Under the pieces are notes generated by a model. That model made no database searches. It was given only the letters and a program-made list of their open reading frames with translations, and was not told where the DNA came from. Shown one piece after another: positions 9,787 through 57,666 of a stretch of 64,000 bases of DNA. The DNA lies in IMG/VR virus record IMGVR_UViG_3300042502_001233, positions 248,001 through 312,000 of that record. One strand, given 5' to 3'. The translations under genes were made by a program, and so were the position numbers. Position 1 is the first letter of the stretch, and every line of letters starts with the position of its first letter.

Positions 9787-9867
9787 TTTGATATAAGTTT
9801 AATTGATTAACGATGCAAAGATATAAACAATTTTATTAACTACAAAGAAAAACTTTAATTATTTTGC

Positions 9868-15814: not shown

Positions 15815-16050
15815 AATGATATGTTTTAAATTAGAATGCAAACATATAAAATCTTTTTTATATATGCAAATATTTTTTAAATATTTTTTACTGGTGCCTG
15901 CGCTACGCGGGGTTACACAAATGTGTACATGCGTGTCCGATGACCTAGCGGCACATAAGAAAGAGGGTCCCCGCAAAATATTTTTAATAAATAAGATAAA
16001 AACTTTACTTTTTATCTTATTACACTATATTTATTATAAACTAAATTTAT

Positions 16051-21023: not shown

Positions 21024-21997
21024 AATATATTTGGTCTTTTAAATTACTTTCATAATAATAGCTTATCCATAAACCAAATTGTTCACCATTGATATAATTC
21101 CCTATATTGCATAGATTTCCATTTGTCCAATACCATTCCCACAATCCGTGGCGTTGGCTTCTTCTATATGGTTTTTTATCTTGCATGGTATTCATGTTGT
21201 TCTCTTATTTCTCTGTTGTATCTAAGCAACGGTCTATAGTATAGATATCCGTAAGGTTCATCATTTATGAAATGAGTTTGAAGGAATATGTCACCAGTGT
21301 TTGCTGCATGCCATCGCCAATATCCGTGACGTTCACCTTGTTTGTTTCTTGGTGTAATATCGTTATCTTGCATAGTATTCATAACTTATTTTTCCAGTGT
21401 GCCAATGGAATTCTTTATATCCAACACTTACACCATCTATATAGTTTTTTATATAGTATAGTCCTCCATTATCGTGATATACCATCCATTTTCCGTTGCG
21501 ATTTTTGTGTTCGTTTTTTTGGTTTATTTTATATTGCATGATATACTGTTTCTGAATATTTGCCACAATTAAATTCATAATACCCATGCAATTTTCCGTA
21601 GATGTAGTGCGATATACTTAATAGTTTTCCATTTGACCAATATATAACATGTTGACCAATTTGATTACCGTTTGCGTATGAGCCTTTATCGTGTAACTGA
21701 CCGTTATCATGATATCTTTCCCAATAACCGTGTCTTTGTTTTTGTTTGTTTCTTGGTGTGATGTCTTTATCTTGCATAGTATAATTCATTTCCTATGTGT
21801 TCACAAAACCCATATATTGTCCTATTTAACATATTGCATTTCAACGTTAAACTACCATCTTCTGAATATGATTCATAGGGTCCAACAACATCACTGTTAA
21901 CAAATAACCCTTTAAAATGTAGCGTTCCATTGGAATAATATACTTCCCAATACCCATGGGCTTGATTTTGATTGTTAAATGGTTTGTTATCTTGCAT
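21013..21997 (-). CDS. Five overlapping MORN-variant/YwqK-like paralogs (stops at 21013, 21176, 21363, 21529, 21767)
   Basis: MQD..P.N...HG.W..Y..NG.....Y.NG...G......YYAR pattern. Confidence 0.75.
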
Positions 21998-22163
21998 AGT
22001 ATTCTATTATTCCTGAACTATTATAATAACTCCAATGTTCAAAGTACCCAAATTCTTCTCCGTTTATGTAGTGACCTTTGTACCATAAGTTATTGTTATC
22101 ATGATGTACCACCCAATAACCATGGGGTTCTTTTTTTTCGTTATGGGGTGTCTTATCTTGCAT
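21987..22163 (-). CDS. YAR-array unit (58 aa, MQDKTPHNEKKEPHGYW...EYYAR)
   Basis: Manual translation; below the ORF-track cutoff. Confidence 0.75.
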   Translation of the reverse strand: MQDKTPHNEKKEPHGYWVVHHDNNNLWYKGHYINGEEFGYFEHWSYYNSSGIIEYYAR

Positions 22164-22329
22164 AGTACGTTCTTTCGTTTATATAGTTATCAGCTACTCG
22201 GTACCATATCCAACCACCTAGAACTTCACCATTGACAACGTTACCACATACACGGTATGTTGGGTTCCAGCTGGTATCCCAAAATCCATGGGCTTATCCT
22301 AATAAGTTAGTTGGTTCTTTATCTTGCAT
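22153..22329 (-). pseudogene. YAR-array unit with in-frame TAA at 22294-22296
   Basis: MQDKEPTNLLG*AHGFW...TYYAR. Confidence 0.7.
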
Positions 22330-22501
22330 AGTAAAAACTTGTTATTAATTCTTCTTTGACTCCATAGTGGGCGCTGTGTCCAAACATTCTACCATTGATA
22401 TAGTTATAGGTGTTGGACATATTACCGTTAGCCCAACGATATATCCATAGCCCATAGGCTGCACCTCTTTCGTTTCTTTTGTTTGTTTCTTTATTTTCCA
22501 T
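22319..22501 (-). CDS. YAR-array unit
   Basis: Ends FYYAR. Confidence 0.75.
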   Translation of the reverse strand: MENKETNKRNERGAAYGLWIYRWANGNMSNTYNYINGRMFGHSAHYGVKEELITSFYYAR

Positions 22502-22537
22502 AATAAAAAAGGGTAGCTAAACGCTACCCTTATTTGA

Positions 22538-22771
22538 TTAGTCCCAAGCGTTTTGTAGCTTTTTGGTTACTGGGTTCAACTCTTGTTGAACGTACTTGAT
22601 AACGTTAGGTGATTCGATAGCGATTGTTCCATGCTCTCCGTGCAAAACTTGGCTGTTTTTTCCAGCTTTGATTTTAAGAATGTTCTCATCGATTTTCTCA
22701 ACTTCTACAACGTTAGTCATTGTGTGCGTGTTTGTGCTAGGTTCTAGCACGATAGTCTTCTGATTTCCCAT
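22538..22771 (-). CDS. His-motif (H.EH) hypothetical protein lying within the array
   Basis: THTM...HGEHG...QQELNP; own promoter and downstream hairpin (22505-22532). Confidence 0.65.
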   Translation of the reverse strand: MGNQKTIVLEPSTNTHTMTNVVEVEKIDENILKIKAGKNSQVLHGEHGTIAIESPNVIKYVQQELNPVTKKLQNAWD

Positions 22772-22844
22772 GTTTTTTTATTTTTAAATGGTTTGTTATA
22801 ATTACAGTACAAATATACTACTTAATTTTTAATTGTGCAAATTT

Positions 22845-23404
22845 TTATCGACAAAAATAAAATTTATTACTTGGTAATTCTTTAAATGAGCGAGTTACTT
22901 CAGTATACCCATATGCTACTCCGTTAACATAGTGTGAAGTTTCCCATGGTCGCCCATCAACCCGATAGTCTTGAAATGGACCGTGTAGTTCTCCTTTTTC
23001 GTTTCTTGGTGATTTATCTCGCATAGTATTCCTCACTTTCTATATTGTTGGATTTGTTTCTCCAAATAAAATAACCGTATCCATCATCATTAAAATAATG
23101 ACCTATACAGAAAGCAACACCGTTGGACCAATAATCTTCCCAACGTCCGTGACGTTGGTATTTATCGTTAAGTGGTTTTTTATCTTGCATAATACTCTTT
23201 TACATAAAATGATTCACCATCTTCCTCATTTTCATAATATATGGAATAACCATATTCAACACCGTTAATGTTGTGGTCCATAAACCATATAGTACCATTA
23301 CCTAAATAACATATCCATTGACCATGTGGTTGTCCTTGTTCGTTACGTGGCTCTTGATTAACTGGCATAATAACTTTTATTTGTCGTTTTGTTTTATCAT
23401 ACAT
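22845..23404 (-). CDS. Three further YAR-array units (22845-23024, 23014-23190, 23180-23404)
   Basis: 23014-23190 translated by hand: MQDKKPLNDKYQRHGRW...EYYAR. Confidence 0.75.
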
Positions 23405-24238: not shown

Positions 24239-24313
24239 ATGTTATTGTTATTTAATTACAGTGCAAATATACTATATTGTTTTTATACTTGCAAATATTT
24301 TTTGATTTTTTTT

Positions 24314-32468: not shown

Positions 32469-33275
32469 TTAAATCGGTAAATTAATTTTACTTAAAATTT
32501 GATTTGATACGTGTGTATATATTTCAGTGGTTTTTACGTTAGCATGACCTAAACATTTTTGTATAATTCTTAAATCAGTACCAGCTTCCAACAGAGCGGT
32601 GGCTTGTGAATGTCTTAACAAATGAAAATGATATTCTTCACCAATATATTTTTTAACTATTTCATTACAACTTCTATGAGAATATTGTAAATTGTTACCT
32701 TGACCATTAAACAAATATTCTTTAGGTTTATACACTTTAAAATATTCACGCAAAAGATTTAAAACAATTGGTGACAAGGGAACGAATCTATCTTTTCTTC
32801 CTTTACTGTTTTTAATGTGTATTAACATTCGTTTACTATCAATATCTTCAATTTTTAAATTACACAATTCAGAAACTCGCATTCCTGTTGAATACGCTAA
32901 TGTAAGTATAGCTTTGTGTTTAATGTTTTCGATTTTAGATAATTTTTCGAGCAGAAACTCCTTTTCGATTATTTTTGGTAATTTTTTCTCTTTTCGTGGT
33001 CTTTTAAACGAAACCTTATCGTATTTTCTTTCTAATCCGTATTTATATAAAAACCTTATTGCGTTTATAACTTGATTTTGTTGTGAAACAGACGTGAATT
33101 TGTAATTATCTAAGTAATTCTGAAAATCTTTAGAATTTAAGTGAGCGACTTGTTTGTCCCCTACATTTTTAATGAAAGAGATAATGTGATACATATAATT
33201 TTCTTTTGTTCGTGGCGAGTAGTTAAGATATATAAACTTTTGTTCACAAATCTTTATAATTTTTTCGTTTAACAT
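32469..33275 (-). CDS. Integron-integrase-like tyrosine recombinase (short form, no IntI insertion)
   Basis: SQQNQVINAIRFLY, RPRKEKKLP, GMRVSE, KGRKDR, HLLRHS, LGH, TTEIYTHV; likely start MLNEK at 33275. Confidence 0.9.
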   Translation of the reverse strand: MLNEKIIKICEQKFIYLNYSPRTKENYMYHIISFIKNVGDKQVAHLNSKDFQNYLDNYKFTSVSQQNQVINAIRFLYKYGLERKYDKVSFKRPRKEKKLPKIIEKEFLLEKLSKIENIKHKAILTLAYSTGMRVSELCNLKIEDIDSKRMLIHIKNSKGRKDRFVPLSPIVLNLLREYFKVYKPKEYLFNGQGNNLQYSHRSCNEIVKKYIGEEYHFHLLRHSQATALLEAGTDLRIIQKCLGHANVKTTEIYTHVSNQILSKINLPI

Positions 33276-33294
33276 ACTGATTTTATTAATGGTT

Positions 33295-33325
33295 TGAGAT
33301 GTTTTTACATATATTATAGTTAGCA
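33295..33325 (+). other. Candidate attI-like site (crossover G|TT at 33319)
   Basis: First cassette starts GTTAGCACC just upstream of the integrase, with no attC hairpin to its left. Confidence 0.65.
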
Positions 33326-33331
33326 CCAATA

Positions 33332-33808
33332 CTACGATAGTGCTTCGATTTCAAGTATCATATCTTTATTTTTTACAGAAAAAACAAATTCACCTACATA
33401 TCCTGCGTCTTCTCCGTAAATAGCATCGCAACTATTCAATTCAGTTAGAAATTTGCTTGATAAGTCTTCTCCTAAAACATTTGAAAATAAATCAAGTTCT
33501 TCTTTGTAATTTGATGTAATTGCTATATCACCGATTACGAATAATCCTTGTTGTCTATTAAATCTATTTCCGTTTTTACCAGTTTTTTCACTATAAATTT
33601 TATTCCATTTATCTAATTTTAGAATATTATAATTTGTTGTATCTATGGTTATTTTATAACAATTATCACCGAATTTTTTAGCGTAATCTAAGTTAACCGC
33701 TAAATAATCAGCACCACTTCGGTTTTTATCATAAACACCATCAACACATTTATACACTGTGGTTTTACCAAAGTTTTTAACTTTATCTATTAATTCTCTT
33801 ATTTCCAT
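33332..33808 (-). CDS. Cassette 1 gene; possible ART-like fold
   Basis: VYK...YLAVNLDYAKKFG; the fold call is weak. Confidence 0.6.
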   Translation of the reverse strand: MEIRELIDKVKNFGKTTVYKCVDGVYDKNRSGADYLAVNLDYAKKFGDNCYKITIDTTNYNILKLDKWNKIYSEKTGKNGNRFNRQQGLFVIGDIAITSNYKEELDLFSNVLGEDLSSKFLTELNSCDAIYGEDAGYVGEFVFSVKNKDMILEIEALS

Positions 33809-33862
33809 ATTTTTACTTATAAATATTCCAAATTTAAAATTCTACCAAATAAACCGTAATGG

Positions 33863-33957
33863 TGCTAACAAGGTGTATAAGAAAGTTTGCTATCAAGTTC
33901 AGTGGTAAATTTGAAAGTTCCTATAAGCAAACCTTCTCATACACCCAATCGTTATAT
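33863..33957 (+). repeat. attC-like site 1 (family A)
   Basis: TAAC 33866, arms GGTGTATAAGAAAGTTTGCT / AGCAAACCTTCTCATACACC, GTT 33951. Confidence 0.9.
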
Positions 33958-33972
33958 TCAATATCAAAAATT

Positions 33973-34329
33973 TTATGGTTTTATAGAAATTGAATTAAAC
34001 CACTTGAGTTCAGATGTTAATTCATTCAACTTACCTTCGTATTTAACTATTTTATTTTCGTTCAATGGTTCGGATATTTTATAACCACCATCAATCTTTA
34101 TATGTTTAGTTTCTTTTTGATTTAGTTTGGAATGAATATTACCAATCCTCTCATTTATTGATTTAACATTCATATCAATAACCCATCTAACATCATCTAT
34201 ATTATGTTTAGATAATTCTTCAACAACTCCATTCCATTTAGTAATGAGTTTTGTTTCTAAATCAAAAACTAAACCACGTTGTCCGCCAAGACAACCATCT
34301 TCTTCAAACCATTCAATTTCTTTTTTCAT
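33973..34329 (-). CDS. Cassette 2 gene
   Basis: ORF fills the cassette. Confidence 0.75.
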   Translation of the reverse strand: MKKEIEWFEEDGCLGGQRGLVFDLETKLITKWNGVVEELSKHNIDDVRWVIDMNVKSINERIGNIHSKLNQKETKHIKIDGGYKISEPLNENKIVKYEGKLNELTSELKWFNSISIKP

Positions 34330-34352
34330 ATGTATAAATTTTTTGATACTAA

Positions 34353-34406
34353 ATATAACAAATGATAAACAACATTAAAACGATTGTTTATCATCAGACG
34401 TTAGTA
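34353..34406 (+). repeat. attC-like site 2 (short family B)
   Basis: TAAC 34356, ATGATAAACAA / TTGTTTATCAT, GTT 34400. Confidence 0.85.
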
Positions 34407-34435
34407 GCAAATTGTAAAACTTGCCACCGCACCAA

Positions 34436-34714
34436 TTACATATATTGTTCCTTTTTGAAATTTATGAATGATAGTTTTTCGTCAACACATTTCTCACAAA
34501 TTTGTGCAGTCCATTTCTGCGTATCTTTTCCGCTATGGTAGCCCCAATGTGTTTCTAACTTCATAAATTCAAAACTGTAATATGGCTCACCGTTATCAAC
34601 TCTAACATTATTATCTATTTCACCTTCATCAACCTTACAACTTTTGCCACAGCAATCACAAATCACATCTGTAATAACTTCGGTCTTTTTGTTTTGTGTT
34701 TCCTTTGTTTCCAT
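34436..34714 (-). CDS. Cassette 3 gene, Zn-finger (CDCC...CEKC)
   Basis: ORF track. Confidence 0.75.
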   Translation of the reverse strand: METKETQNKKTEVITDVICDCCGKSCKVDEGEIDNNVRVDNGEPYYSFEFMKLETHWGYHSGKDTQKWTAQICEKCVDEKLSFINFKKEQYM

Positions 34715-34765
34715 TTATATTTTAGTTTATCGTTTTCCTACGCTCAAAAAAGTTTTACAATCAGC

Positions 34766-34820
34766 TACTAACAGCGTATAAAAAACATTAAAACGATTTT
34801 TTATACGCAAACCGTTATAA
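34766..34820 (+). repeat. attC-like site 3 (family B)
   Basis: TAAC 34769, GCGTATAAAAAA / TTTTTTATACGC, same acattaaaacga loop as site 2, GTT 34814. Confidence 0.85.
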
Positions 34821-34826
34821 CCAATA

Positions 34827-36731
34827 CTACTTTTCGTCTCCGTAAATTGGCATATATCTTTCATCGTAACCAACGATTTTTCTATGTTTATTATCATCAA
34901 TGTATTTATCATCAGCATTTTTTTGTTGGTCAAACTCTTCTTTAAGTTTGATTAACCCATCTCTTAGTTCTTTTGGCAAAAGAGATTCATCAGCTAAAAT
35001 TTCTTGTCTGATTTGTTCGTGTTTTTGGTGAATATTATTCCCATGTTCAATTATTTTTTCTATTTTATTCTCCATATTTTTAATTTTTAAAACATTCAAT
35101 TAGTTTAATACTTGGTAAATTCCAAACATCAATTATTTTATAATCTGAACCATCAGTATTTGTTAGTATGATATTATTCGGTTCAATTTTGAAATCTGTT
35201 CTTATACAAATACCAAGGTTTTTATCGTTTTCTCTAATAAGAAAAAATGGTTCAAAACTTTTACTAACATCAGCTTTGTATCTTTTATAATTATAAACAT
35301 CATGTTCACCTATAATATGAAAATCTTTAAAATTATCAAATATAACACAAATCTGTCCAGATGCTATAACAACATCTAAATCAAATTCTTTCATATAATA
35401 CCTAACGAAACTATTTAAACTTTCGTTATGTTCAAGTTGTGTAATATCATTATTTGGTTTTTTATAATCCCAAACATAATCTTTTACTTTATCAACATTT
35501 TTTTCATATTCCTTAAATGTTTTATATTCAAGTCTTTTTAATATTTCTTCCATATTTTAATATTTTAACAATAAATCATTCAATTCTATATCTAAACCAA
35601 ATAATGATTTTTCAATCACTTCACGTATTGTTAATGTTGGTTCATCTTTCATAATATTTAAACAAATTAACATTAGCTCATTTGTTCTATCTGTTTGGTT
35701 GGTGAATTTAATCACATAATCAATATATTTTAAATCATCAAAATGTTCCATATTTTTAATTTTCATATATTTTAAAAATTTCTTCAATTTTAACTATTTT
35801 ATTACCAAATAAAACTTTATCACCAATAAACTCGTATTTAGAAATAAGATAATTTTCAAACCAATGTAAAAAAATAACAATATCTTGGTATGAATATTCA
35901 CTTTCAATATCCATAAATATTTTATGGTCTAAAAACATCCCAATAGGGTAGTAAACCCAATCATCTGGATTTCTACTATCTACTTCATCCACTAATTCCC
36001 TACAAAAAGATAAATCATTAAAATGATGATTATATACGTGAGGCTCATACCCACCAATTTTATTTTTATATGGTAAATTTAAACTCTTAATAAAATAAGG
36101 TTTTTTTTCATAATTGACATTAGATTCATATAATGAATTACGAAGTTTTAGTTTAAGTTTTTCTAACTTTTTATCGTAGTTGGTATTTGTCTTCGCAACA
36201 AATCCTTTATTTTTAAATTCTTCAACTTCTTCATCTGAACAATCTTCAACCCATTTAATATCAATATCAATAAGTTCTGTTTCTACTGAAGTGTCATCGT
36301 TTATTTTAGTTTCTCCACGATAGGCAAATGGTATTAAACCATTTTCTGGTATTTTAAAATTTTTTTCCATATTTTATAAATTTATTTTATTGATTAATTG
36401 GATATATGAGTTAATAGGTAATTTTTCAGATAAATATTTTTTTATTATTTCTGAATTATTGTATTTTTTTGGGTTATCCAAAAACTCAAAAAGAATTTCT
36501 TTAAATAAATCTTTTTCAATATCACTTTCACTACAATAACTCATAAAATCACCAAATGATGGTATGAAAGTATTAATATCAGTCATTATTATTTATATGT
36601 TTTAGTATTTCTTTAATAACATCTACCCATTGATTGGTTTCAGTTATATGTTTAATTTTGTTTTCTGAAAAAGAAGATACTTGTCTAAGACCTTCTTTAT
36701 CTGTAATAATAATCTCCATTTTATTTTCCAT
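34827..36731 (-). CDS. Cassette 4: operon of six ORFs (34827, 35080, 35557, 35756, 36374 and a short ORF near 36586-36731)
   Basis: ORF track; own TATATTTG promoter box near 36746. Confidence 0.7.
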
Positions 36732-36800
36732 AATTTATTTTTTTTACAAATATACTAATTATTATTCAATTAATCAAGTTTTATCTTAAAATCACCGTAC

Positions 36801-36824
36801 TGGTTATAACAAATGTTATAACCA
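36801..36824 (+). repeat. Collapsed attC-like site 4
   Basis: tggttaTAAC-aaat-GTTataacca; no hairpin body. Confidence 0.7.
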
Positions 36825-36827
36825 ATA

Positions 36828-37849
36828 CTACTTTTCGTCTTCGTAAATCGGCATAAAGTTTTCAGAATAACCAACTATTTTCCTATGTTTATTCTCTTCG
36901 ATATATTTATCATTAGCTATTTTTTGTTGGTCAAATTTTTCTTTAAGTTTTATTAACTCATCCTTTAGTTCTTTTGGTAAAAGAGACTCATCAGCTAAAA
37001 TTTCTTGTCTGATTTGTTCATGTTTTTGGTGAATACTATTTCCATATTCAATTATTTTTTTTATGTTATTCATGATTAAACGTATATTTTATATTTATTT
37101 TCTTTATAAGTTATTAATAATAATTCTCTAGGTATAACAGATAATGTATCTAACCAATTATGTCTTTCAGTTTCTGTTTTCTCCAAATATATATCTTCTC
37201 TAATGGTGTTTAAGCAGTCCGTTCTTATTATTGTGTTGAAATTGTCTGATAAAACCAATCTATTTTCTAATTCTAAATTAGTTTTAATAACGTTTAAACC
37301 AATACTTTGATATTGGTTCGTGGTTTTTGTGATTTCATTTATAAAATCACACATTTTTAAGTGCTTTAAAGATGGTTCATTTTTAGTAACTAAACTAAAA
37401 AATTCAAAATCAGTATCTTTATTCAACCAATCATACTTTTTAATCGAAATTATTAGTTTTAATTTATCACGATATTCATCAACTTCAGTTTTTGAAAGTT
37501 CTCCGACCATAACCCACGTTAAATCTTCAATAAATGTTTCATTACCATCAATGGGTGTTAACTTAGCTTTCGGAACGCCAATCATTGTTTCTTGTTCATA
37601 TTTATTACCACATTCTATTAACGATTTATTTGGATAACTTGTTTTTGTATCAGTTTTATAAATAAAATTAACTTTCCTTGGAATAAAATATTCTTCCAAT
37701 TCTTTAAATATTTCTGGATACCTTTCTTTTAAATATGAGTCACATTTTACGTAGTCAATACCATATCTAAAAGTCGTTTTATGTAATGCTAAAGAATAAC
37801 TTTTAATCACATCAATCAAATTATTTATATTATATATGCTTTTTTTCAT
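36828..37849 (-). CDS. Cassette 5: two ORFs (36828, paralog of 34827; 37076)
   Basis: ORF track; ends nearly identical to cassette 4. Confidence 0.75.
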
Positions 37850-37921
37850 AATTTATTTTTTTTACAAATATACTAATAATTATTCAATTAGTCAAGTTTT
37901 ATCTTAAATTCACCGTACTGG

Positions 37922-38015
37922 TTATAACAAGGTGTATAAGAAAGTTTGCTATTAAGTTTAGTTGTAATTTGAAAGTTCATCTAAGCAAACCTTCTCATAC
38001 ACCCAATCGTTATGT
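37922..38015 (+). repeat. attC-like site 5 (family A)
   Basis: TAAC 37925, GTT 38009. Confidence 0.9.
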
Positions 38016-38091
38016 GTAAGTGTGAGTTCCCTCTCCGAATTAACTTTTGTGTTAGAAAATTTTAGAAAAAAGAACCCACCGCACATATTTT

Positions 38092-39033
38092 TTATTTTTT
38101 TTCAGTTATTAAATTATTATCTAAAGCATAAAATAATTGTATAAAGTATCTTTTATCTTTTAATTTCACATCTCCAGTATAACTATCATATGTTCTACCG
38201 TTTGTCATTCTTATTTTCGATAATGGTTGAGTTCTTAATAATTGAATGTCTTTTTCATTCATATTAAAGTATGATTCACCATCACAGTTAAATTTTTTCC
38301 AAGATTTTTTAGTAATCTTTTCACCATTTTCAAAAAGAATAATAATCTCATCATTTTCATTACATCCACCAATACCTACCATTGTAGTAGTAATCATTGA
38401 AAATGATAGTTTATCAGAGTTTATGTGTGTTGATATTCTGAATCCAATTTTTCCAACATCGTTAGCACAGATAAAATCTCTACTTCCATATACATATGTT
38501 TCCCCACTCATAACATCAGTTTCCTTTACTACATAAACACTGTCTTTTGATGTTTGTCCAAAAGATACTATTGTCATTAAACACATCATTAGTGTCATCA
38601 TCATTACTTTTAAATTTTTCATTTTTATTTATTTTAAGTTAATTATTTTTTAATTTCTACAATCAATCATTACAGTTCCACCACCACAAATATACACATC
38701 ATTAACGTGAGTGTTATTTTTATAATGTTCTTTTAAATCACTTTTTAATGTCTCATATTCATTACCATTTACAACTTTTTCAATTCTAACATTAATTAAT
38801 CTACCAGTTGGCATTACTTTATATGAACCATCCTTTGTGTATTTTGTATATTCCTGACCACCTAACATCCCATAACTTTGGTATGTGGTTTGTAAAGATT
38901 CAACAAACTCATCAGTTATTTGATACAACTCTGTGTTTGGTTCTATAATGTTTTTCACTTTATCACCAACACCATTACAAGACATCATAAAAACAGCCAA
39001 TAATCCCATTAAAATTAATTTTACTTTTTTCAT
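38092..39033 (-). CDS. Cassette 6: secreted protein (38092) and lipoprotein (38650)
   Basis: Signal peptide ...VSFGQ; lipobox FMMSC; TACCTTTG box near 39096. Confidence 0.75.
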
Positions 39034-39202
39034 TTTATTTGTTTTTTTAATTTACCTACTCTAAATCAGTTTTCGGTTTCCCTGTTTTTGTTTTACAAAG
39101 GTAAGTATAATTTCTTAAATAAAAAAATATTTCCCCTTCTTTTTTTCTAAAATTTTCTTTTAGTGCTTCAATTGAAGTTCATCGCTTAATAATCACACCT
39201 AC

Positions 39203-39297
39203 ACATAACAAGGTGTATAAGAAAGTTTGCTGTAAAGTTTGGTGGTAAAATTGAAAGTTCGTCTAAGCAAACCTTCTCATACACCCAACCGTTAGCA
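39203..39297 (+). repeat. attC-like site 6 (family A)
   Basis: TAAC 39206, GTT 39291. Confidence 0.9.
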
Positions 39298-39303
39298 CCA
39301 ATA

Positions 39304-39732
39304 CTACGTCCATTGCGGAGAATCAGGCATTTCATATCCAAGTTCTTGTAATTTCAGGTATCCGAAAAAGTGATTTTTATTATATCCTGATATTTCGTCA
39401 TCTGAACTATATTCAGTAAACCAAACAGATTTATGGTGAAACTGCATTCTACACTTTGATATAGTAGTAAAATAACCATCACTTACGGTATCTTGGCTAA
39501 GTAGCTCTACATCAATTGAACAATCCCCATACTTTCTAAATGATTCATAAAAATCAAGCCCAAGTATTCCGTTTCTTGAAATTATAGTGTTAACTGTCAA
39601 AGGGTGTATTCTGTTAATAACTGAAATTACATCTTCGTCAGTAATATCAATTAGTCGTTTCAAAACCGTACTGGTGCTAACAGCACCTATACCCAATTGG
39701 GCAGTTTCGTTGTTTTTTGAAGTTTCTTCCAT
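39304..39732 (-). CDS. Cassette 7 gene (start inside attC7)
   Basis: N-terminal TAQLGIGAVS encoded by the attC arm. Confidence 0.75.
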   Translation of the reverse strand: MEETSKNNETAQLGIGAVSTSTVLKRLIDITDEDVISVINRIHPLTVNTIISRNGILGLDFYESFRKYGDCSIDVELLSQDTVSDGYFTTISKCRMQFHHKSVWFTEYSSDDEISGYNKNHFFGYLKLQELGYEMPDSPQWT

Positions 39733-39807
39733 TTTATTAAGTTTTATCTGTTATTGAAAATTTGTGCTATTTATTGCCCAACTGGGCATAGCTACAATCC
39801 GTTAGCA
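39675..39807 (+). repeat. attC-like site 7 (family C)
   Basis: TAAC 39678, CTATACCCAATTGGGCA / TGCCCAACTGGGCATAG, GTT 39801. Confidence 0.88.
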
Positions 39808-40095
39808 GTAATCAGGATGAACTGCTAAATAATGTAAGTAAATAGAATGAATTTTTGGCTTACCAATACAAGTTAATAAACTAACTTGTTCTGCATTAAT
39901 AAATTCTGCTATTGGAATTTTACCTGAAATATCAATTCGTAATATTTTAATTGGCTCTTTAGATTTATCAAAAGTGTTGTAAAAAATATTTTTTTTAATT
40001 AAATCTATTTCTTTTAAAAATAAATCCGAAAAGACTACTGCTAACACATTATTGTCGCAATTGGCGGTTTTGGTACTCTCTGAATGTTTTGTCAT
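39802..40095 (-). CDS. Cassette 8 gene (start inside attC8, stop at the crossover TTA)
   Basis: ORF track. Confidence 0.7.
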   Translation of the reverse strand: MTKHSESTKTANCDNNVLAVVFSDLFLKEIDLIKKNIFYNTFDKSKEPIKILRIDISGKIPIAEFINAEQVSLLTCIGKPKIHSIYLHYLAVHPDYC

Positions 40096-40172
40096 TACTT
40101 TTATTTTTAGTGATTAATCAATAGTTTGTTTTGTGTTTGTCGCCACCTGACGACAATAATCCAACGTTAAAT
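40039..40172 (+). repeat. attC-like site 8
   Basis: TAAC 40042, ATTATTGTCG / CGACAATAAT, GTT 40166. Confidence 0.85.
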
Positions 40173-40499
40173 GCAAGTTATCCCAAAATCACGTTTAAGA
40201 ATTTTGATACAATTTTCCTTATTAAGTGATGAAATATAAATGCAATTTTCTTTTTTAATAACTTTTTTATTTTTCTTTTTAAAATTACCATTAACAGCAT
40301 CGTTCCAATGAATCTCTTTTATTTCAAGCTCGAAAACGGCTAATTCAATAGTTCTTTTATTTAAATCAAACTCAAACAAAATGTGATTTTCGTGTGGTAT
40401 AATTCTTGAATCAAAAACTTTTTGAATTTCTGCTTGTTGCTGTTTAGTGATTTCAATTTTATCTTTTACTTTGTCTTTTTCAAAATCGGATAATCTCAT
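40167..40499 (-). CDS. Cassette 9 gene
   Basis: Stop at the crossover TTA. Confidence 0.75.
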   Translation of the reverse strand: MRLSDFEKDKVKDKIEITKQQQAEIQKVFDSRIIPHENHILFEFDLNKRTIELAVFELEIKEIHWNDAVNGNFKKKNKKVIKKENCIYISSLNKENCIKILKRDFGITCI

Positions 40500-40510
40500 A
40501 TTTAACCTGC

Positions 40511-40643
40511 ATTTAACAGCCGTTTGGCAAGATTAGTGCTTTAGGGCTTAATTTATAATTGTCTTGTATTTGTTATTTAAGTGATAAAATGATAGTTTTA
40601 CGCTTATTTATCACTAACCTCGCCAAGCGTGAAAACGTTAGCA
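40511..40643 (+). repeat. attC-like site 9
   Basis: TAAC 40514, TTGGCAAGATTAGTG / CACTAACCTCGCCAA, GTT 40637. Confidence 0.85.
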
Positions 40644-40982
40644 GTCATTGCTACCATACGTTTCCAAATCGAAAATTTCGCCAACTTCATTTCTATATTG
40701 AAATTTAAAATTGTCTGTTAAATTTCGTGTCAATGATGCACTTGAAAATACTTTTTTATTTTGAACACAACTTGCAATATCTTCAATCTTTGCTCTACCA
40801 AAATCGTAGCTATCACCGTGCAAAGTAAATATTGAATTATCTCTATCAAGTGTCCACCATCCACCGCCTTTAACCTTTGAAATATCGGTTGCAAGTTGTT
40901 TATGATAAGTACATTTTGCCACTATTAAGCAGTCGCCTTCTTGGTCATCTGTTTCGATTATAAATTTTGGGAATACATCCAT
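40638..40982 (-). CDS. Cassette 10 gene
   Basis: Likely start MDVFPK; GGGWW...G.S.DFG motif. Confidence 0.75.
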   Translation of the reverse strand: MDVFPKFIIETDDQEGDCLIVAKCTYHKQLATDISKVKGGGWWTLDRDNSIFTLHGDSYDFGRAKIEDIASCVQNKKVFSSASLTRNLTDNFKFQYRNEVGEIFDLETYGSNDC

Positions 40983-41021
40983 TTTTAAATTGAGTTTTGT
41001 TGTTAATAATCCGCAACGAAC

Positions 41022-41152
41022 TGCTAACATAGTGTTGCCAAAATGGGGGCAGACGTGCATTTAATGAACATTTGTACTGTATTCAGCAGTAGTGCTTTTA
41101 ATGGGCTTTTGTACTATAAATCCCCTACTTCGGCAACACTCAGCCGTTAGCA
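41022..41152 (+). repeat. attC-like site 10
   Basis: TAAC 41025, AGTGTTGCC / GGCAACACT, GTT 41146. Confidence 0.85.
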
Positions 41153-41162
41153 GTAATTATTG

Positions 41163-41387
41163 CTAACCGTTGTACATAGAAAAAGCCACTACATCGAAGT
41201 CGCCTAAAAAATCTTCTTTCTTTCTTGTCACGATAACTTGAACTTGTATTTCTTCATTTTCATTTATAACTAAACTTCCACAAGAGGTTGAAAAAGCATA
41301 GTTTTCTTGGTTTTCTGCTAATTTTTCAGCACATTCTTTGATTGCTCCTTTCAAATAAAGCGAATCGATTAATTTTTCTAAAGCCAT
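41163..41387 (-). CDS. Cassette 11 gene
   Basis: Likely start MALEK. Confidence 0.7.
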   Translation of the reverse strand: MALEKLIDSLYLKGAIKECAEKLAENQENYAFSTSCGSLVINENEEIQVQVIVTRKKEDFLGDFDVVAFSMYNG

Positions 41388-41408
41388 AATATTTGGTATT
41401 ATAACTAC

Positions 41409-41539
41409 TGCTAACATTCGCTATACAATAGTTGGGTTAATTTTTAAATTTAAAGTTCAGTTTGTACTTTTTTAATCAGTCTTTAATCGAAGTTTGGGTC
41501 TGTACCTTTCCCAACCATCGTATAGCTTTTCCGTTATAA
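41409..41539 (+). repeat. attC-like site 11
   Basis: TAAC 41412, GCTATACAATAGTTGGG / CCCAACCATCGTATAGC, GTT 41533. Confidence 0.85.
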
Positions 41540-41544
41540 GCCAT

Positions 41545-41793
41545 TTAAAGCGGAAACCTACTACGACAATATTCTCCATCATTTTTTTCGTAAAAACTTC
41601 TTGCATCTTCACGAGTTCCTACAAAAACACATCTATCCTCTTGCATAATATAAACACATTCTCTATTCCATAAAGCAAGTGGTATTTTAAACCATTTCGC
41701 ACCATCTTCAATATCATCGTGTACATGAAGAGAAAAACGGCTTATAACAGCGGTTTTGTCGCATTGTGGCACTTGGTCTTTTTCTGTATTCAT
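41545..41793 (-). CDS. Cassette 12 gene (start inside attC12)
   Basis: MNTEKDQVPQCDKTAVISR. Confidence 0.7.
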   Translation of the reverse strand: MNTEKDQVPQCDKTAVISRFSLHVHDDIEDGAKWFKIPLALWNRECVYIMQEDRCVFVGTREDARSFYEKNDGEYCRSRFPL

Positions 41794-41877
41794 AGTTTTT
41801 AATTTAATTATTGTTTTATTTTTGTTAAGTTTGGTCTTTAATCGCCACAACGACGACAAAGCCACAGGACGTTAGTA
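41742..41877 (+). repeat. attC-like site 12
   Basis: TAAC 41745, GTT 41871. Confidence 0.85.
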
Positions 41878-41882
41878 GCCAT

Positions 41883-42086
41883 TTAAGAAAGTGCTTTTTT
41901 CAACGCTTTCAATATTCTTTGGCACTCTTTCTTTTCTTCACCAACATTATTCCAAACAAGAAACTCATAAGTACTTATCATTCCTTCTGCTGTATCTCGT
42001 CTTATTTTAACATTAACAAAACGGCTACTAACAGCACCTATACCCAATTGGGTAGTTTCTTGGTTATTCAAATTTTCGTGTTCCAT
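41883..42086 (-). CDS. Cassette 13 gene (start inside attC13)
   Basis: MEHENLNNQETTQLGIGAVSSR. Confidence 0.7.
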   Translation of the reverse strand: MEHENLNNQETTQLGIGAVSSRFVNVKIRRDTAEGMISTYEFLVWNNVGEEKKECQRILKALKKALS

Positions 42087-42158
42087 ATTTACTTTATTTT
42101 AAGTTGATAATTTTGTGTTTCAAATCGCCCAACTGGGCATAGCTGCAAAACGTTAGCC
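42026..42158 (+). repeat. attC-like site 13 (family C)
   Basis: TAAC 42029, arms nearly identical to attC7, GTT 42152. Confidence 0.88.
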
Positions 42159-42164
42159 GTAATT

Positions 42165-42431
42165 CTAATCACGCCAAGTGATGTGCATTGCTTCTAACTT
42201 ATCCCCAAGTATCGGACTGCCATAGTTTTCAAACTTCATTTTAATTGAAGGATAAACTTCCAATCCATTTGGACATTGTGTTTTTAATGGTAGCTTTCGT
42301 TTATCTTCTGAAATTCGTAATGCTTCTAAAATGAAGTCATTCAAACTTTTATCTTCGGAAGAAGAACTACGGCTAACAACGTATTGCTGAACATTGCCAG
42401 CTTCATCGGTAATTTGAACTTTGTATTCCAT
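42165..42431 (-). CDS. Cassette 14 gene (start inside attC14)
   Basis: MEYKVQITDEAGNVQQYVVSRS. Confidence 0.7.
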   Translation of the reverse strand: MEYKVQITDEAGNVQQYVVSRSSSSEDKSLNDFILEALRISEDKRKLPLKTQCPNGLEVYPSIKMKFENYGSPILGDKLEAMHITWRD

Positions 42432-42504
42432 ATCAACCTTTTATTTTAAATTAAACATTTGTGCTTCTAAATTGGCAACGTCAGCAATACGCAAAACGTT
42501 ATAC
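42371..42504 (+). repeat. attC-like site 14
   Basis: TAAC 42374, CGTATTGCTGA / TCAGCAATACG, GTT 42498. Confidence 0.85.
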
Positions 42505-42520
42505 ACAATATTTTTACCAA

Positions 42521-43020
42521 TCACACCGCATAAATCCATAATTGAGTTATTTGTTCGTCAGTAATATTTTCTGGTGTTATATCATATTCACCATATTTTT
42601 TCATATATGTTATATATTCTAATTTCATATCTTTGGATAACGAGTTCCAAAAATTTAATGATTTTTGTCTGTCTTCCATTTCTTCATCATTCATAACTCT
42701 AATTATTTTATGTTCTAATAATTGTGGTGCAATAATACCTTGATTATATAACCAACTCGCTAACTTAAATTGTAGTCTTACTAATAGTGTTTTCATTTCT
42801 TATTTATTATTTATTAAAATTACTCGAAAATAGGTAAAAAAGTTTCGTTATCATAACCAATAATCTTTTTACCGTTTTTTATATTATCGTTTATCCATTT
42901 ATCTTCTTCAGACCACTTTGTTTCAAATTCTGTTTTTAAATTATTCATTCGGTCTTTTAAATCTTGTGGGATATTATCATTATTTAATATCTCATTTCTT
43001 AATTGTTCGTGTTTTTCCAT
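42521..43020 (-). CDS. Cassette 15: two ORFs (42521; 42820, paralog of 34827/36828)
   Basis: ORF track; TATATTTG box near 43035. Confidence 0.7.
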
Positions 43021-43085
43021 AATTCTATTTTTTACAAATATACTAATTTATTTCTAATTTATCAACCCTCCCACAAAAATACTGT

Positions 43086-43179
43086 GTATAACAAGGTGTA
43101 TAAGAAAGTTTGCTATCAGCATTTGTGGTAATTTTAAAGTTCATCTAAGCAAACCTTCTTATACACCCAACCGTTATAG
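43086..43179 (+). repeat. attC-like site 15 (family A)
   Basis: TAAC 43089, GTT 43173. Confidence 0.9.
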
Positions 43180-43208
43180 GAAATTTTATTTTTTTTCTCA
43201 CCGCACCG

Positions 43209-43511
43209 TTAGCATCTTGGAACACCTTCTGCTGGGTCATACCATCCGTGAATATTAAATTCGTGCTTTGGCGAAGGTTTTTTACCCCATTTAGCAACTG
43301 CTTCTTCTTCTGTTTTTGGAAACGGAAATTGATTATGAATAACATTTAGTTCTTGTTGGTGCTTTTCATCACCCATACTTGGGTCAATTTCGTGTTTAAA
43401 AACTAAATTAAGATGCTTCTTAATCATTGTCGTTTGTTCTTTGGTTATTGTTTCAGCGTTGCTTACTTCAAAAAAACCTTGTAGCCAATAGGCAAAATCT
43501 CTACTTGTCAT
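43209..43511 (-). CDS. Cassette 16 gene (MTSRDFAYWLQGFFE, a phage-type motif)
   Basis: F.YWLQG..E...IK.HL.LVF motif. Confidence 0.75.
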   Translation of the reverse strand: MTSRDFAYWLQGFFEVSNAETITKEQTTMIKKHLNLVFKHEIDPSMGDEKHQQELNVIHNQFPFPKTEEEAVAKWGKKPSPKHEFNIHGWYDPAEGVPRC

Positions 43512-43557
43512 ATTTTTAAATTTGTTTATTGCCAACCCACAAAAAAATAAAACTATC

Positions 43558-43653
43558 CTATAACACGGGTTTGACGTAATGCCACCAGATAGTTTAGGCT
43601 AAATTTAAAGTTCGTGCAAGGTGGCACTAACGCCAAGCCCGAAACCGTTATGA
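43558..43653 (+). repeat. attC-like site 16 (last)
   Basis: TAAC 43561, CGGGTTTGACGTAATGCCAC / GTGGCACTAACGCCAAGCCCG, GTT 43647. Confidence 0.85.
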
Positions 43654-44118
43654 AAACCATTCTGGTAATTCTCTACCTTTCCATTTGGCTAATTTCCTTT
43701 TCTCTGTTCTATAATATTCTCTGTAGCTATCCACAGCATCACCAACCTTGCATTCGTCTGGCATAGCCAAAGCAAATGGTGTTATATCACTATTGTATTT
43801 CAATTTAGGTTTATGTATTAAACACCATTCAATTACCGCTTGTGACTTATGTCTTTTTTCGTAACGATATGTGTATTCTTTGCACAATTCAAGTCCCAAA
43901 TCACAAAGCCAAATGTAGTTTTCCATACATTCTCTGGCCCATATTGCACTTGGATGATTTTTATGGGATAACTTGTATGGTATATCATACCCAGATTCTA
44001 CTACGTGATGAACGCCACACAACAATTGTGCATATTCAACTATCATCTTGGTACAATGGCGATTTACATGGTATTTTGCACATTTTTTAACATCTAAATC
44101 TAAAACGAATATGTTCAT
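43648..44118 (-). CDS. Pyrimidine-dimer DNA glycosylase / endonuclease V family protein
   Basis: MNIF.LD...CA.YH...H..KM.VE.AQLL...H.NHP...W...EY..RY...H. Confidence 0.8.
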   Translation of the reverse strand: MNIFVLDLDVKKCAKYHVNRHCTKMIVEYAQLLCGVHHVVESGYDIPYKLSHKNHPSAIWARECMENYIWLCDLGLELCKEYTYRYEKRHKSQAVIEWCLIHKPKLKYNSDITPFALAMPDECKVGDAVDSYREYYRTEKRKLAKWKGRELPEWFS

Positions 44119-45137: not shown

Positions 45138-45172
45138 ATCTTTTTATTTATAAATATACGGAACTTTGAAAA

Positions 45173-45259
45173 AGTTTCAAGTATCATCTTAACAACATGT
45201 TTATCATTGTGATATTGTGCACATTTTTTTGTGTTTGTGTCCAGTACAAATATATTCAT
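45173..45259 (-). pseudogene. Stranded 5' end of the glycosylase gene (MNIFVLDTNTKKCAQYHNDKHVVKMILET)
   Basis: Manual translation aligns to the N-terminus of 43648. Confidence 0.85.
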
Positions 45260-57535: not shown

Positions 57536-57592
57536 TTTACTTCTTTCTAAATAAATATCTAGAAATTATAAAAAGTACAAAAAAGTTTAAGG

Positions 57593-57666
57593 TGGAAGTA
57601 ACGGGACTCGAACCCGTGTTCTCGCAACATCAGCCGCTTTATACTATCCTATTGTACTATACTCCC
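57593..57666 (-). tRNA. tRNA-like RNA with G3:U70 and A73, irregular anticodon loop (CTGATG)
   Basis: GGGAGTA/TACTTCC-A, D arm GTAC/GTAT, T arm ACGGG-TTCGAGT-CCCGT. Confidence 0.7.

What the first reader, a model, noticed from the sequence alone, without database searches (positions are those of the whole stretch)
32469..33275. Integrase lacks the IntI-specific insertion, yet the sites look bottom-strand folded
Seen: ~268 aa, with LLREYFKVYKPKEYLFNG running straight through where classical IntIs carry the extra segment that binds extrahelical bases. The arms of several sites (1, 5, 6, 7, 9, 11, 13) have A-C mismatches on the top strand at about +10/+12 and +15 after TAAC, which become G-T wobbles on the bottom strand. 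The spacer before CGTTA is asymmetric, and only some sites (8, 12, 14) have a bulged base. Inference: a distinct class of ssDNA-hairpin recombinase using mismatches for strand selection, which an IntI C-terminal HMM could miss.
Basis: partly seen in the sequence, partly recalled or inferred. Interest (0 to 1): 0.8.

Follow-up and report, generated by a model that had tools for sequence, protein, structure and literature searches.

The report
Integron-like gene cassette array in jumbo phage
A giant phage carries its own integron-like gene-capture platform: a small tyrosine recombinase that lacks the hallmark integron-integrase insert, an insertion site next to it, and about 16 swappable gene cassettes, each marked by a DNA hairpin. 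This kind of machinery was thought to need that insert.

Summary
The 268-aa recombinase (32469-33275, minus strand) has all catalytic residues of a tyrosine recombinase but lacks the roughly 45-residue IntI-specific segment. Fifteen hairpin sites (33866-43650) fold better on the minus strand, because A.C mismatches on the plus strand are G.T wobbles on the minus strand.

The locus behaves like an integron:
- A conserved attI-like site (core TAAC followed by TATNATATAT) lies 40-110 nt upstream of the integrase start in 28 of 31 related phage loci.
- Arrays of hairpins lie only upstream of the integrase, all in one orientation.
- The two ends of each cassette are complementary across the TAAC crossover.
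- Two phages with nearly identical backbones differ by one 802-bp cassette inserted exactly at the attI TAAC.
- Two phages whose integrase genes are 75% identical share one cassette at 99.4% identity, bounded by TAAC cores.

It differs from classical integrons in four ways: the recombinase forms its own clade, next to integrases of flavobacterial phages; the sites carry a 3-4 nt bulge beside the core and fixed G.T wobbles instead of spaced extrahelical bases; cassette genes read towards the integrase; and the host is a 362-kb phage.

Single-stranded folding and strand choice by wobbles are inferred, not shown. No description of such a system was found in the searched literature.

The parts
32469..33275 (-). 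Tyrosine recombinase (268 aa), the putative cassette integrase; it has no IntI-specific insert
   Evidence: Pfam Phage_integrase plus Phage_int_SAM_4. NCBIfam scores are all below cut-off: XerA 186 against 220, IntI 159 against 265, XerC 155 against 335. Catalytic residues R133, K158, H218, R221, H244 and Y253 are conserved. The model has no helix at 183-199.
33276..33322 (-). attI-like insertion site. On the minus strand the core reads TAAC (33322-33319) followed by TATAATATATGT. It lies between the integrase ATG and the first cassette.
   Evidence: The motif YTAAC-TATNATATAT is found upstream of the integrase in 28 of 31 related loci, with variable sequence 5' of TAAC. Homology on the integrase side with 7 other phages stops at 33322. 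In L020 compared with L023, one cassette is inserted at this TAAC.
33323..43650 (-). Array of about 16 cassettes. On the plus strand each runs from just after one GTTA to the next site's GTTA. All ORFs lie on the minus strand and read towards the integrase.
   Evidence: The cassette ORFs have no Pfam or PHROG match. The first gene beyond the array (43648-44118) matches phrog_624 at 1e-57.
33866..33954 (-). Hairpin site S1 (89 nt)
   Evidence: R1 scores 102 bits on the minus strand and 32 bits on the plus strand. dG is -14.7 (minus) against -11.9 (plus).
34356..34403 (-). Hairpin site S2 (48 nt)
   Evidence: 38.8 bits. The same site type occurs in 8 other phage loci.
34769..34817 (-). Hairpin site S3 (49 nt)
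   Evidence: 46.5 bits.
36806..36822 (-). Remnant of an 89-nt site whose hairpin is deleted (plus strand reads TAACAAATGTTA). It fuses two cassettes.
   Evidence: The flanks are homologous to 37842-37940 up to TAACAA. R1 gives a weak hit, E = 0.35.
37925..38012 (-). Hairpin site S4 (88 nt)
   Evidence: 103 bits.
39206..39294 (-). Hairpin site S5 (89 nt)
   Evidence: 103 bits.
39678..39804 (-). Hairpin site S6 (127 nt). The start codon of ORF 39304-39732 lies in its loop.
40042..40169 (-). Hairpin site S7 (128 nt)
40514..40640 (-). Hairpin site S8 (127 nt). This is the weakest site and the only one without a strand preference in the folding energy.
   Evidence: E = 0.88.
41025..41149 (-). Hairpin site S9 (125 nt)
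41412..41536 (-). Hairpin site S10 (125 nt)
41745..41874 (-). Hairpin site S11 (130 nt)
42029..42155 (-). Hairpin site S12 (127 nt)
42374..42501 (-). Hairpin site S13 (128 nt)
43089..43176 (-). Hairpin site S14 (88 nt)
   Evidence: 105 bits.
43561..43650 (-). Hairpin site S15 (90 nt), the far end of the array
   Evidence: 55.8 bits.
37855..37901 (-). Promoter-like motif of Bacteroidota type inside a cassette. Copies also lie at 36737-36783 and 43025-43071 (repeat family D13, read in register with this copy), so some cassettes carry their own promoter.
   Evidence: Repeat families D1 and D13. In each case the motif sits between the hairpin and the first ORF. Promoter function is inferred from the consensus only.

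Best explanation
This is an integron-like gene-capture platform carried by a jumbo phage, probably one infecting Bacteroidota.

Read on the integrase-sense (minus) strand, the order is: cassettes, then attI, then the integrase gene. Each cassette starts with a hairpin site. The site consists of the core TAAC; a G that pairs with a T on the other arm; a 3-4 nt bulge; a stem of about 20 bp whose sequence varies but which keeps G.T wobbles at fixed positions; a loop of 10-90 nt; and the closing arm ending T-GTTA. One or a few ORFs follow on the same strand.

The proposed mechanism is as follows. The recombinase cuts and rejoins within or beside TAAC. A hairpin site recombining with attI inserts a circular cassette next to the integrase gene. 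Two hairpin sites recombining with each other excise or reshuffle cassettes.

Shown by sequence comparison:
- the architecture of the sites;
- the crossover position;
- the modularity of the cassettes;
- insertion at attI;
- exchange of a cassette between diverged phages;
- a folding bias towards one strand.

Inferred:
- that this recombinase is the catalyst;
- that the site is recognised as a folded single strand (the integrase-sense strand, as in classical integrons);
- that the bulge and the wobbles replace the extrahelical bases read by the IntI I2 helix;
- that the product is resolved by replication.
For: Recombinase:
- The catalytic residues are intact and the IntI insert is absent.

Sites:
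- 15 sites in the window against 1.6 expected by chance.
- Covariance model R1 finds them only in the array, and far better on the minus strand (105 bits against 42 bits for the best site).
- In 39 aligned sites, 97.4% of cells pair (75% after shuffling), 16 of 25 pairs show compensatory changes, and the covariation score is 0.60 against at most 0.14 for slid controls.

Conservation of the layout:
- Across the related viral loci, about 130 sites lie upstream of the integrase, all but two in one orientation, against 6 downstream.
- The loci that the simple scan missed also have sites when searched with R1.

Crossover and modularity:
- The 9-nt flank after site k pairs with the 9-nt flank before site k+1: 7.43 of 9 positions, and at least 8 of 9 in 63% of cases.
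- The two flanks of the same site pair at 4.83 of 9 (3% reach 8 of 9). Random pairs give 4.84 of 9 (5%).

attI:
- A conserved motif is present in 28 of 31 loci, and homology breaks exactly at TAAC.

Mobility:
- From attI through the integrase gene, L019, L020 and L023 are 100% identical over 849 nt, yet the DNA 5' of TAAC is unrelated.
- L020 equals L023 plus one 802-bp cassette.
- L016 and L029 share a 495-bp cassette at 99.4% identity, bounded by TAAC cores, while their integrase genes are 75% identical. A second shared piece lies in the opposite order.

Strand bias:
- G.T or T.G occurs 212 times against 29 A.C in stem positions 1-14.
- The integrase-sense strand is more stable in 106 of 117 sites, with a mean difference of -2.4 kcal/mol.
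Against: - There is no experiment. All related loci are metagenomic assemblies.
- The favoured strand is also the mRNA-sense strand, so G.U pairing in RNA could explain the wobble bias without any single-stranded DNA.
- The recombinase lacks the I2 helix, which published work treats as the basis of attC hairpin recombination in IntI (PMC7790495).
- No free circular cassette was observed.
- The cassette genes point towards the integrase, so the classical logic of expression from a promoter at attI does not apply.
- The nearest relatives in the tree are integrases of cultured flavobacterial phages that have no such sites.
Confidence: 0.8

Rival explanations
1. The cassette system is real, but the sites are recombined as double-stranded or cruciform DNA, not as a folded single strand. 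On this view the wobble bias comes from selection on the mRNA hairpin or from strand-biased mutation.
For: The recombinase looks like a compact Xer-type enzyme with no I2 helix. The favoured strand is the coding strand, and in 42 of 79 long hairpins the ORF start lies in the loop, so RNA folding would matter. The sense strand has excess G over C throughout.
Against: The conserved half-cores lie 40-160 nt apart, so in linear duplex form they cannot make a normal core site. Stems covary freely in sequence, which points to recognition of structure. The wobbles sit at fixed positions: the pair at alignment columns 33/85 of A3 is G.T in 38 of 39 sites. The 7:1 ratio exceeds what the skew would give. 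A cruciform would also present the other strand, which carries A.C mismatches.
Confidence: 0.15
2. The hairpins are RNA-level or transcriptional elements (terminators, processing or translation-control hairpins). The recombinase is an ordinary phage integrase or dimer resolvase that merely happens to lie next to them.
For: The hairpins are intergenic, lie on the sense strand, carry G.U-compatible wobbles, and often enclose start codons. The sister clade consists of annotated phage integrases.
Against: This does not explain the conserved TAAC at attI, the homology breaks exactly at TAAC, the complementary cassette ends hundreds of nt apart, the single-cassette insertion, or the 99.4%-identical cassette shared by diverged phages. 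No T-run follows the hairpins (direct reading of the sequences), and there is no Rfam match.
Confidence: 0.03
3. Modules are shuffled by homologous recombination between repeated hairpin sequences, as proposed for the promoter-stem-loop (PeSL) motifs of T4-type phages, without a site-specific enzyme.
For: Four nearly identical 89-nt sites in the window, and many more across phages, could serve as homology patches.
Against: attI and the hairpins share only TAAC, yet a cassette sits exactly there. Neighbouring cassettes carry unrelated stems. The crossover always falls at one end of the site, not inside the repeat. A recombinase gene always sits beside the array.
Confidence: 0.02

Closest known systems
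Bacterial integrons (IntI, attI, attC cassettes; for example class 1 and the Vibrio chromosomal integron)
   Same: The recombinase gene lies beside an attI site. It is followed by an array of cassettes, each carrying an imperfect palindrome with inverse cores of the AAC / GTT type, variable stem sequence and variable length (48-160 nt). The crossover falls in the core at one end. Cassette ends are complementary only in the circular form. Most cassettes are small ORFan genes (median cassette 426 bp). The better-folding strand is the integrase-sense strand, as with the attC bottom strand.
   Different: There is no IntI-specific insert or I2 helix, and the protein scores below the IntI cut-offs. 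It forms a separate clade. The sites have a 3-4 nt bulge directly beside the core and fixed G.T wobbles, instead of two spaced extrahelical bases. The R box extends to about 13 bp. Cassette genes lie on the folding strand and read towards the integrase. Some cassettes hold their start codon inside the hairpin loop. The host is a jumbo phage. A model built on these sites does not detect the Vibrio attC sites.
XerCD-mediated integration of the CTX phage single-stranded hairpin (IMEX elements)
   Same: A Xer-type tyrosine recombinase without an I2 helix acts on a folded single-stranded hairpin. This shows that such chemistry does not strictly need the IntI insert (background summarised in PMC7790495).
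   Different: The CTX hairpin mimics a duplex dif site and uses the host enzymes for one integration event. Here the phage encodes its own enzyme, there is a dedicated attI, and many different hairpins sit in an array.
Archaeal XerA and bacterial XerC/XerD dimer resolvases
   Same: Best sequence and fold matches: 4a8e at 3e-35; 5hxy is the top Foldseek hit; NCBIfam XerA is the top-scoring model. Size and two-domain build are similar.
   Different: The protein scores below every curated cut-off. No dif-like 28-bp site was seen. The gene is tied to a cassette array in every locus. Relatives at 46% identity or less, in chromosomes and MAGs, have no hairpin sites.
Clusters of attC sites (CALINs) and IntI integrons reported in phage genomes (PMC9892861)
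   Same: Cassette-like arrays inside phage genomes, including one Polaribacter phage.
   Different: Those were found with IntI and attC models and have 2-4 classical attC sites with no phage-specific recombinase. The system described here has its own recombinase family, its own attI, and 15-20 sites per array.
pdif modules of Acinetobacter plasmids and PeSL modules of T4-type phages (named from my own knowledge, not tested here)
   Same: Small gene modules bounded by short recombination or stem-loop motifs that shuffle between replicons.
   Different: pdif sites are 28-bp duplex Xer sites in alternating orientation. PeSL shuffling is thought to go through homologous recombination. Neither has an attI, a dedicated recombinase, or structure-defined sites.

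Membership tests
Integron (IntI-based) | Integrase carries the IntI-specific additional domain (I2 helix) in the catalytic domain | tested here: not met
   Alignment A1 shows about 45 residues missing relative to IntI1 and IntIA. 2a3v and TIGR02249 match in two stretches with the middle absent. The model has a loop at 183-199.
Integron (IntI-based) | Integrase reaches the curated IntI model cut-offs (TIGR02249, NF011946) | tested here: not met
   158.6 bits against a cut-off of 265, and 106.8 bits against 435.
Integron (IntI-based) | attC-type sites: imperfect palindromes with inverse cores ending AAC / starting GTT, with variable sequence and length and conserved structure | tested here: met
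   15 sites in the window and 117 unique sites in 23 loci. The cores are nnMTAAC and GTTAKnn. There is strong covariation.
Integron (IntI-based) | Two spaced extrahelical bases on the 3' arm of the folded bottom strand, with an unpaired central spacer | tested here: not met
   Instead, one 3-4 nt bulge lies on the 5' arm beside the core, and G.T wobbles sit at fixed stem positions. The comparison with classical attC rests on my knowledge of the VchIntIA-VCR structure.
Integron (IntI-based) | An attI site beside the integrase gene where cassettes are inserted | tested here: met
   The motif is conserved in 28 of 31 loci, homology breaks at TAAC, and one cassette is inserted there in L020 relative to L023.
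Integron (IntI-based) | Cassettes are discrete mobile units with the crossover in the core | tested here: met
   Cassette ends are complementary. L016 and L029 share a 99.4%-identical cassette bounded by TAAC cores.
Integron (IntI-based) | Cassette ORFs read away from the integrase and are expressed from a promoter at attI or intI | tested here: not met
   The longest ORF lies on the integrase-sense strand, reading towards the integrase, in 133 of 142 cassettes. Some cassettes have their own promoter-like motif.
Integron (IntI-based) | Recombination of one folded strand, with replicative resolution | not testable with these tools
   Only indirect evidence: the integrase-sense strand is more stable in 106 of 117 sites.
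Xer recombinases (XerC, XerD, XerA) | Reaches the curated equivalog cut-offs | tested here: not met
   XerA 186 against 220, XerC 155 against 335, XerD 151 against 330. The protein lies outside the XerC/D group in the tree.
Xer recombinases (XerC, XerD, XerA) | Acts at a single dif-like duplex site of about 28 bp | not tested
   No dif-like site was searched for. The gene is linked to hairpin arrays in every locus that has enough upstream sequence.
Temperate-phage integrase (attP/attB) | One attP next to the integrase gene, and prophage copies in host genomes | tested here: inconclusive
   Among one genome per GTDB species, close relatives occur only on MAG contigs that also carry the hairpins. 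No clear prophage junction was seen.

The most novel reading that the evidence does not exclude
A lineage of phage tyrosine recombinases without the I2 helix runs a true integron-type system on folded single-stranded hairpins. It reads a bulge and fixed G.T wobbles instead of extrahelical bases. This would be a second class of integron, either independently evolved or ancestral, living in jumbo phages. It would bear directly on the proposed viral origin of integrons and on whether I2 is needed for hairpin recombination.
Probability: 0.55. Interest if true: 0.92.

Novelty: new variant of a known kind. Interest (0 to 1): 0.86.

Why it matters
- **Origin of integrons.** Published work attributes the shift of integron integrases from duplex to hairpin substrates to acquisition of the I2 helix, notes the lack of intermediates, and speculates about a viral origin (PMC7790495). 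This locus offers a natural I2-less enzyme tied to hairpin cassettes in a virus, so those ideas become testable.
- **Blind spot in detection.** As I understand it, integron finders key on the IntI C-terminal model and a classical attC model. This family is large: 6284 proteins at E <= 1e-10 among the candidates scored. It would then go unrecognised. I could not run those finders here.
- **Phage genome plasticity.** The system gives jumbo phages a dedicated way to trade small accessory genes of unknown function, possibly counter-defence genes.
- **Possible tool.** A compact recombinase with structure-defined sites could be useful for DNA engineering.

Tried and rejected
- **Plain TAAC...GTTA pattern.** 96 matches against 72 expected, so it is uninformative on its own. 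A stem-aware scan and a covariance model were needed.
- **Megablast of the window against GenBank phages.** No match, so no annotated close relative exists there.
- **Pfam and PHROGs on cassette ORFs.** Nothing usable.
- **Rfam on the array.** No family for the hairpins; only a sub-threshold DUF805b hit.
- **Cultured relatives.** Cellulophaga phage Ingeline and Polaribacter phage Freya, whose integrases are 39-40% identical to this one, have no R1-type sites. The length variation upstream of the Freya integrase was not explained.
- **GTDB genomes.** Only MAG contigs with integrases at least 53% identical carry sites. The chromosomal relative in Ilyomonas (46% identity) and the Xer-like relatives do not.
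- **Cassette sharing at protein level.** Few shared cassettes between loci. Turnover is so fast that most arrays share only the hairpins.
- **Literature.** Six full-text searches found no description of this system.
- **Longer TTG start at 33329.** Rejected, because it would run through attI, and homologues start at the position of the ATG at 33275.

Full report
**Source and setting.** The window is part of a 362,018-bp viral contig, IMGVR_UViG_3300042502_001233 (L006 is the same locus). It reads like a large phage. Nearly all genes are on the minus strand, and it encodes HNH and homing endonucleases, a sigma factor and a nuclease. GC content is about 31%. A promoter-like motif of the Bacteroidota type recurs in intergenic regions. 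GenBank phages hold no close relative.

**The protein.**
- The ORF at 32469-33275 (minus strand, 268 aa) is a complete tyrosine recombinase: Pfam Phage_integrase plus the SAM_4 N-terminal domain.
- R133, K158, H218, R221, H244 and Y253 are conserved.
- It falls below every curated NCBIfam cut-off: XerA 186 against 220, integron integrase 159 against 265, XerC 155 against 335, XerD 151 against 330.
- The integron-integrase model and the VchIntIA structure each match in two stretches with the middle missing.
- In alignment A1, IntI1 and a Vibrio IntIA carry about 45 extra residues exactly where the query reads straight through LLREYFKVYKPKEYLFNG.
- An AlphaFold model (pLDDT 88) has only a loop at residues 183-199. 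Its best structural matches are XerA and VchIntIA about equally. The IntI alignments are about 50 columns longer than the query.
- In a quick maximum-likelihood tree the family forms a clade (SH-aLRT 96). Its sisters are the integrases of Cellulophaga phage Ingeline and Polaribacter phage Freya, followed by a chromosomal protein of Ilyomonas. IntI1 and IntIA form a separate clade on the XerC/D side. The tree is unrooted and small, so ancestry cannot be read from it.

**The sites.**
- A stem-aware scan finds 15 sites between 33866 and 43650, plus a remnant with its hairpin deleted at 36806-36822. The same scan gives 1.6 hits per dinucleotide shuffle of the window, with a maximum of 5.
A.C mismatches lie on the plus strand at +10 or +12 and at +15. 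In total there are 27 A.C against 4 G.T. The minus strand folds better in 14 of 15 sites, and in most sites only the minus-strand fold closes the TAAC/GTTA box.
- An alignment of 39 sites of the 88-nt class from 19 loci gives this consensus structure:
  - a 5-bp box, TAACG with TGTTA, including one G.T;
  - a 4-nt bulge on the 5' arm only;
  - a 20-bp stem.
- In that alignment, 97.4% of cells pair (75% after shuffling). 16 of 25 pairs show compensatory changes. The covariation score is 0.60, against at most 0.14 when the partners are slid. The strongest covariation lies beyond the 12 stem positions used to select the sites.
- One G.T wobble is nearly invariant (38 of 39 sites), and two more are common.
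- Covariance model R1, built from this alignment, finds hits with E below 0.01 only within the array. It scores the minus strand far above the plus strand (105 bits against 42 bits for the best site).

**The layout is conserved.**
- The protein family is large: 6284 proteins at E <= 1e-10 among the candidates scored. Relatives of 57-90% identity lie on viral contigs of up to 343 kb.
- Across these viral loci, about 130 sites lie upstream of the integrase, all but two in one orientation, against 6 downstream. Loci that the simple scan missed also have sites when searched with R1.
- Over 117 unique sites, spacers are 5 nt against 1-2 nt in most cases. Stem positions 1-14 hold 212 G.T or T.G wobbles against 29 A.C.
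- The integrase-sense strand is the more stable in 106 of the 117, with a mean difference of -2.4 kcal/mol and p = 4e-19. The mean is negative in all 23 loci.
- Relatives at 46% identity or less, the two cultured flavobacterial phages, and a classical Vibrio integron give no R1 hit.

**Evidence for recombination.**
1. Nucleotide homology between the window's array and other phages' arrays is confined to the hairpins. The integrase gene is 70-80% identical, and that homology stops at 33322 in seven loci.
2. At that point every locus has a conserved motif: TAAC followed by TATNATATAT, 40-110 nt upstream of the integrase start. The sequence on the other side of TAAC varies. This is an attI-like site.
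3. The 9-nt flank after site k pairs with the 9-nt flank before site k+1: 7.43 of 9 positions, and at least 8 of 9 in 63% of cases. The two flanks of the same site pair no better than random, at 4.83 against 4.84. So each unit between consecutive TAAC cores carries matched ends that would complete a 13-bp box only in a circle. This is the classical signature of a cassette whose crossover lies in the core.
4. L019, L020 and L023 are 100% identical over the 849 nt from attI to the end of the integrase gene, and 96-100% identical for kilobases downstream. Their DNA on the cassette side of TAAC is unrelated.
5. L020 equals L023 plus one 802-bp unit, made of an 89-nt hairpin and an ORF of about 190 aa, sitting exactly at the attI TAAC. 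attI and the hairpin share only four bases there, so a repeat-driven assembly error cannot produce this.
6. L016 and L029 have integrase genes only 75% identical, yet share a 495-bp segment at 99.4% identity that runs from one TAAC core to the next. A second shared piece lies in the opposite order.

**Cassette content.**
- In 24 loci there are 142 cassettes, with a median length of 426 bp. The longest ORF lies on the integrase-sense strand in 133 of them.
- None of the window's cassette ORFs tested matches Pfam above its cut-off or any PHROG. The first gene beyond the array matches phrog_624 strongly.
- In long hairpins the ORF often starts in the loop (42 of 79). The TAA within the next TAAC core serves as the stop codon in 22 of 137 cassettes.
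- Some cassettes carry a promoter-like motif between the hairpin and the first ORF.

**Comparison with classical integrons.** Viewed on the plus strand, the geometry of integrase, attI and sites is that of a classical integron. The integrase points leftward, attI lies beside it, and each cassette ends with its site, with the crossover at the far end. The better-folding strand is the integrase-sense strand, as with the attC bottom strand.

The differences are:
- the enzyme (no I2 helix, a separate clade);
- the unpaired features of the site (one bulge beside the core and fixed wobbles);
- the longer R box;
- the inverted orientation of the cassette genes, which places the folding strand on the coding, non-template strand;
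- the host, a jumbo phage.

A cassette newly inserted at attI therefore lands at the downstream end of a co-directional gene string, just before the integrase gene.

**What is inferred.** The following are inferences:
- this recombinase catalyses the events;
- the site is used as a folded single strand;
- the bulge and wobbles set the orientation.

The main caveat is that the favoured strand is also the transcript strand, so RNA-level selection could contribute to the wobble bias. Xer enzymes acting on the folded CTX phage genome show that hairpin substrates do not strictly need the IntI insert (background in PMC7790495).

**Literature.** Six full-text searches and three papers consulted with the paper reader turned up no description of this system. 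The one study of integrons in phages used IntI and attC models. It reported three IntI integrons and 17 small attC clusters (PMC9892861).

Noticed in passing
window 15829-15875, 17196-17242, 22800-22846, 24254-24300, 58703-58749 and at least 8 more: A recurrent intergenic motif that on the minus strand reads TTTG, a spacer, then TAnnTTTG. This is the Bacteroidota-type promoter consensus (from my own knowledge) and supports a Bacteroidota host.
   Followed up: partly
window 5827-5859, 6795-6827, 7426-7458, 8347-8379, 9780-9812, 11773-11805, 14890-14922: A conserved leader (plus strand GATATAAGTTTAATTGRTT) lies directly upstream of seven minus-strand start codons. It may be a class-specific promoter or translation signal (family D15).
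   Followed up: no
window 21701-23202; 46842-47514; 13811-14083; 60008-60101: Repeated coding modules of about 166-226 nt and about 190 nt (families D4, D9, D11, D18). The modules at 46842-47514 lie inside the HNH/homing endonuclease gene 46472-47605.
   Followed up: no
window 39053-39086 (-): A sub-threshold Rfam match to DUF805b RNA (29.3 bits, gathering score 35.6, E = 6e-5). It lies inside cassette 6, upstream of ORF 38650-39033.
   Followed up: no
window 57591-57666 (-): ARAGORN calls a tRNA-like gene of undetermined type with a two-base anticodon.
   Followed up: no
window 34827-35099, 36828-37073, 42820-43020: Three paralogous small ORFs lie in three different cassettes. 34814-35070 and 36815-37071 are 88% identical, starting at the GTTA core.
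   Followed up: partly
window 36806-36822 and 43177-43211: These look like sites whose hairpin has been deleted, leaving TAAC and GTTA cores close together. The second is a guess, based on a GTTAGC half-site that supplies the stop codon of ORF 43209-43535.
   Followed up: partly
cassettes of 24 loci; in the window, ORFs ending at 39802, 40167, 40638, 43209 and 43648: The TAA inside the TAAC core is the stop codon of the upstream cassette ORF in 22 of 137 cassettes. Hairpins longer than 105 nt hold the ORF start in their loop in 42 of 79.
   Followed up: yes
Polaribacter phage Freya_1 to Freya_10 (MT732463-MT732472); L045, L060: Freya phage isolates, all from the same host strain, differ by up to 4.9 kb. 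The start of the record lies 50 to about 4150 nt upstream of their integrase gene, in a run of small ORFs. They have no R1-type hairpins. A TAAC...GTTA inverted repeat lies at L060 7-115.
   Followed up: partly
window 43648-44118 and 45095-45259; L003 7816-8117: The phrog_624 gene just beyond the array has a truncated paralogue 1 kb away. Its homologue in another phage lies on the other side of the integrase.
   Followed up: no
attI versus the hairpin 5' arm, for example L001, L006, L038: The attI sequence after TAAC (…TATATGTGAAA…) resembles the 5' arm of the 88-nt hairpins (…TATATGAGAAG…), offset by about 2 nt. This may mark the second binding site of the recombinase.
   Followed up: no
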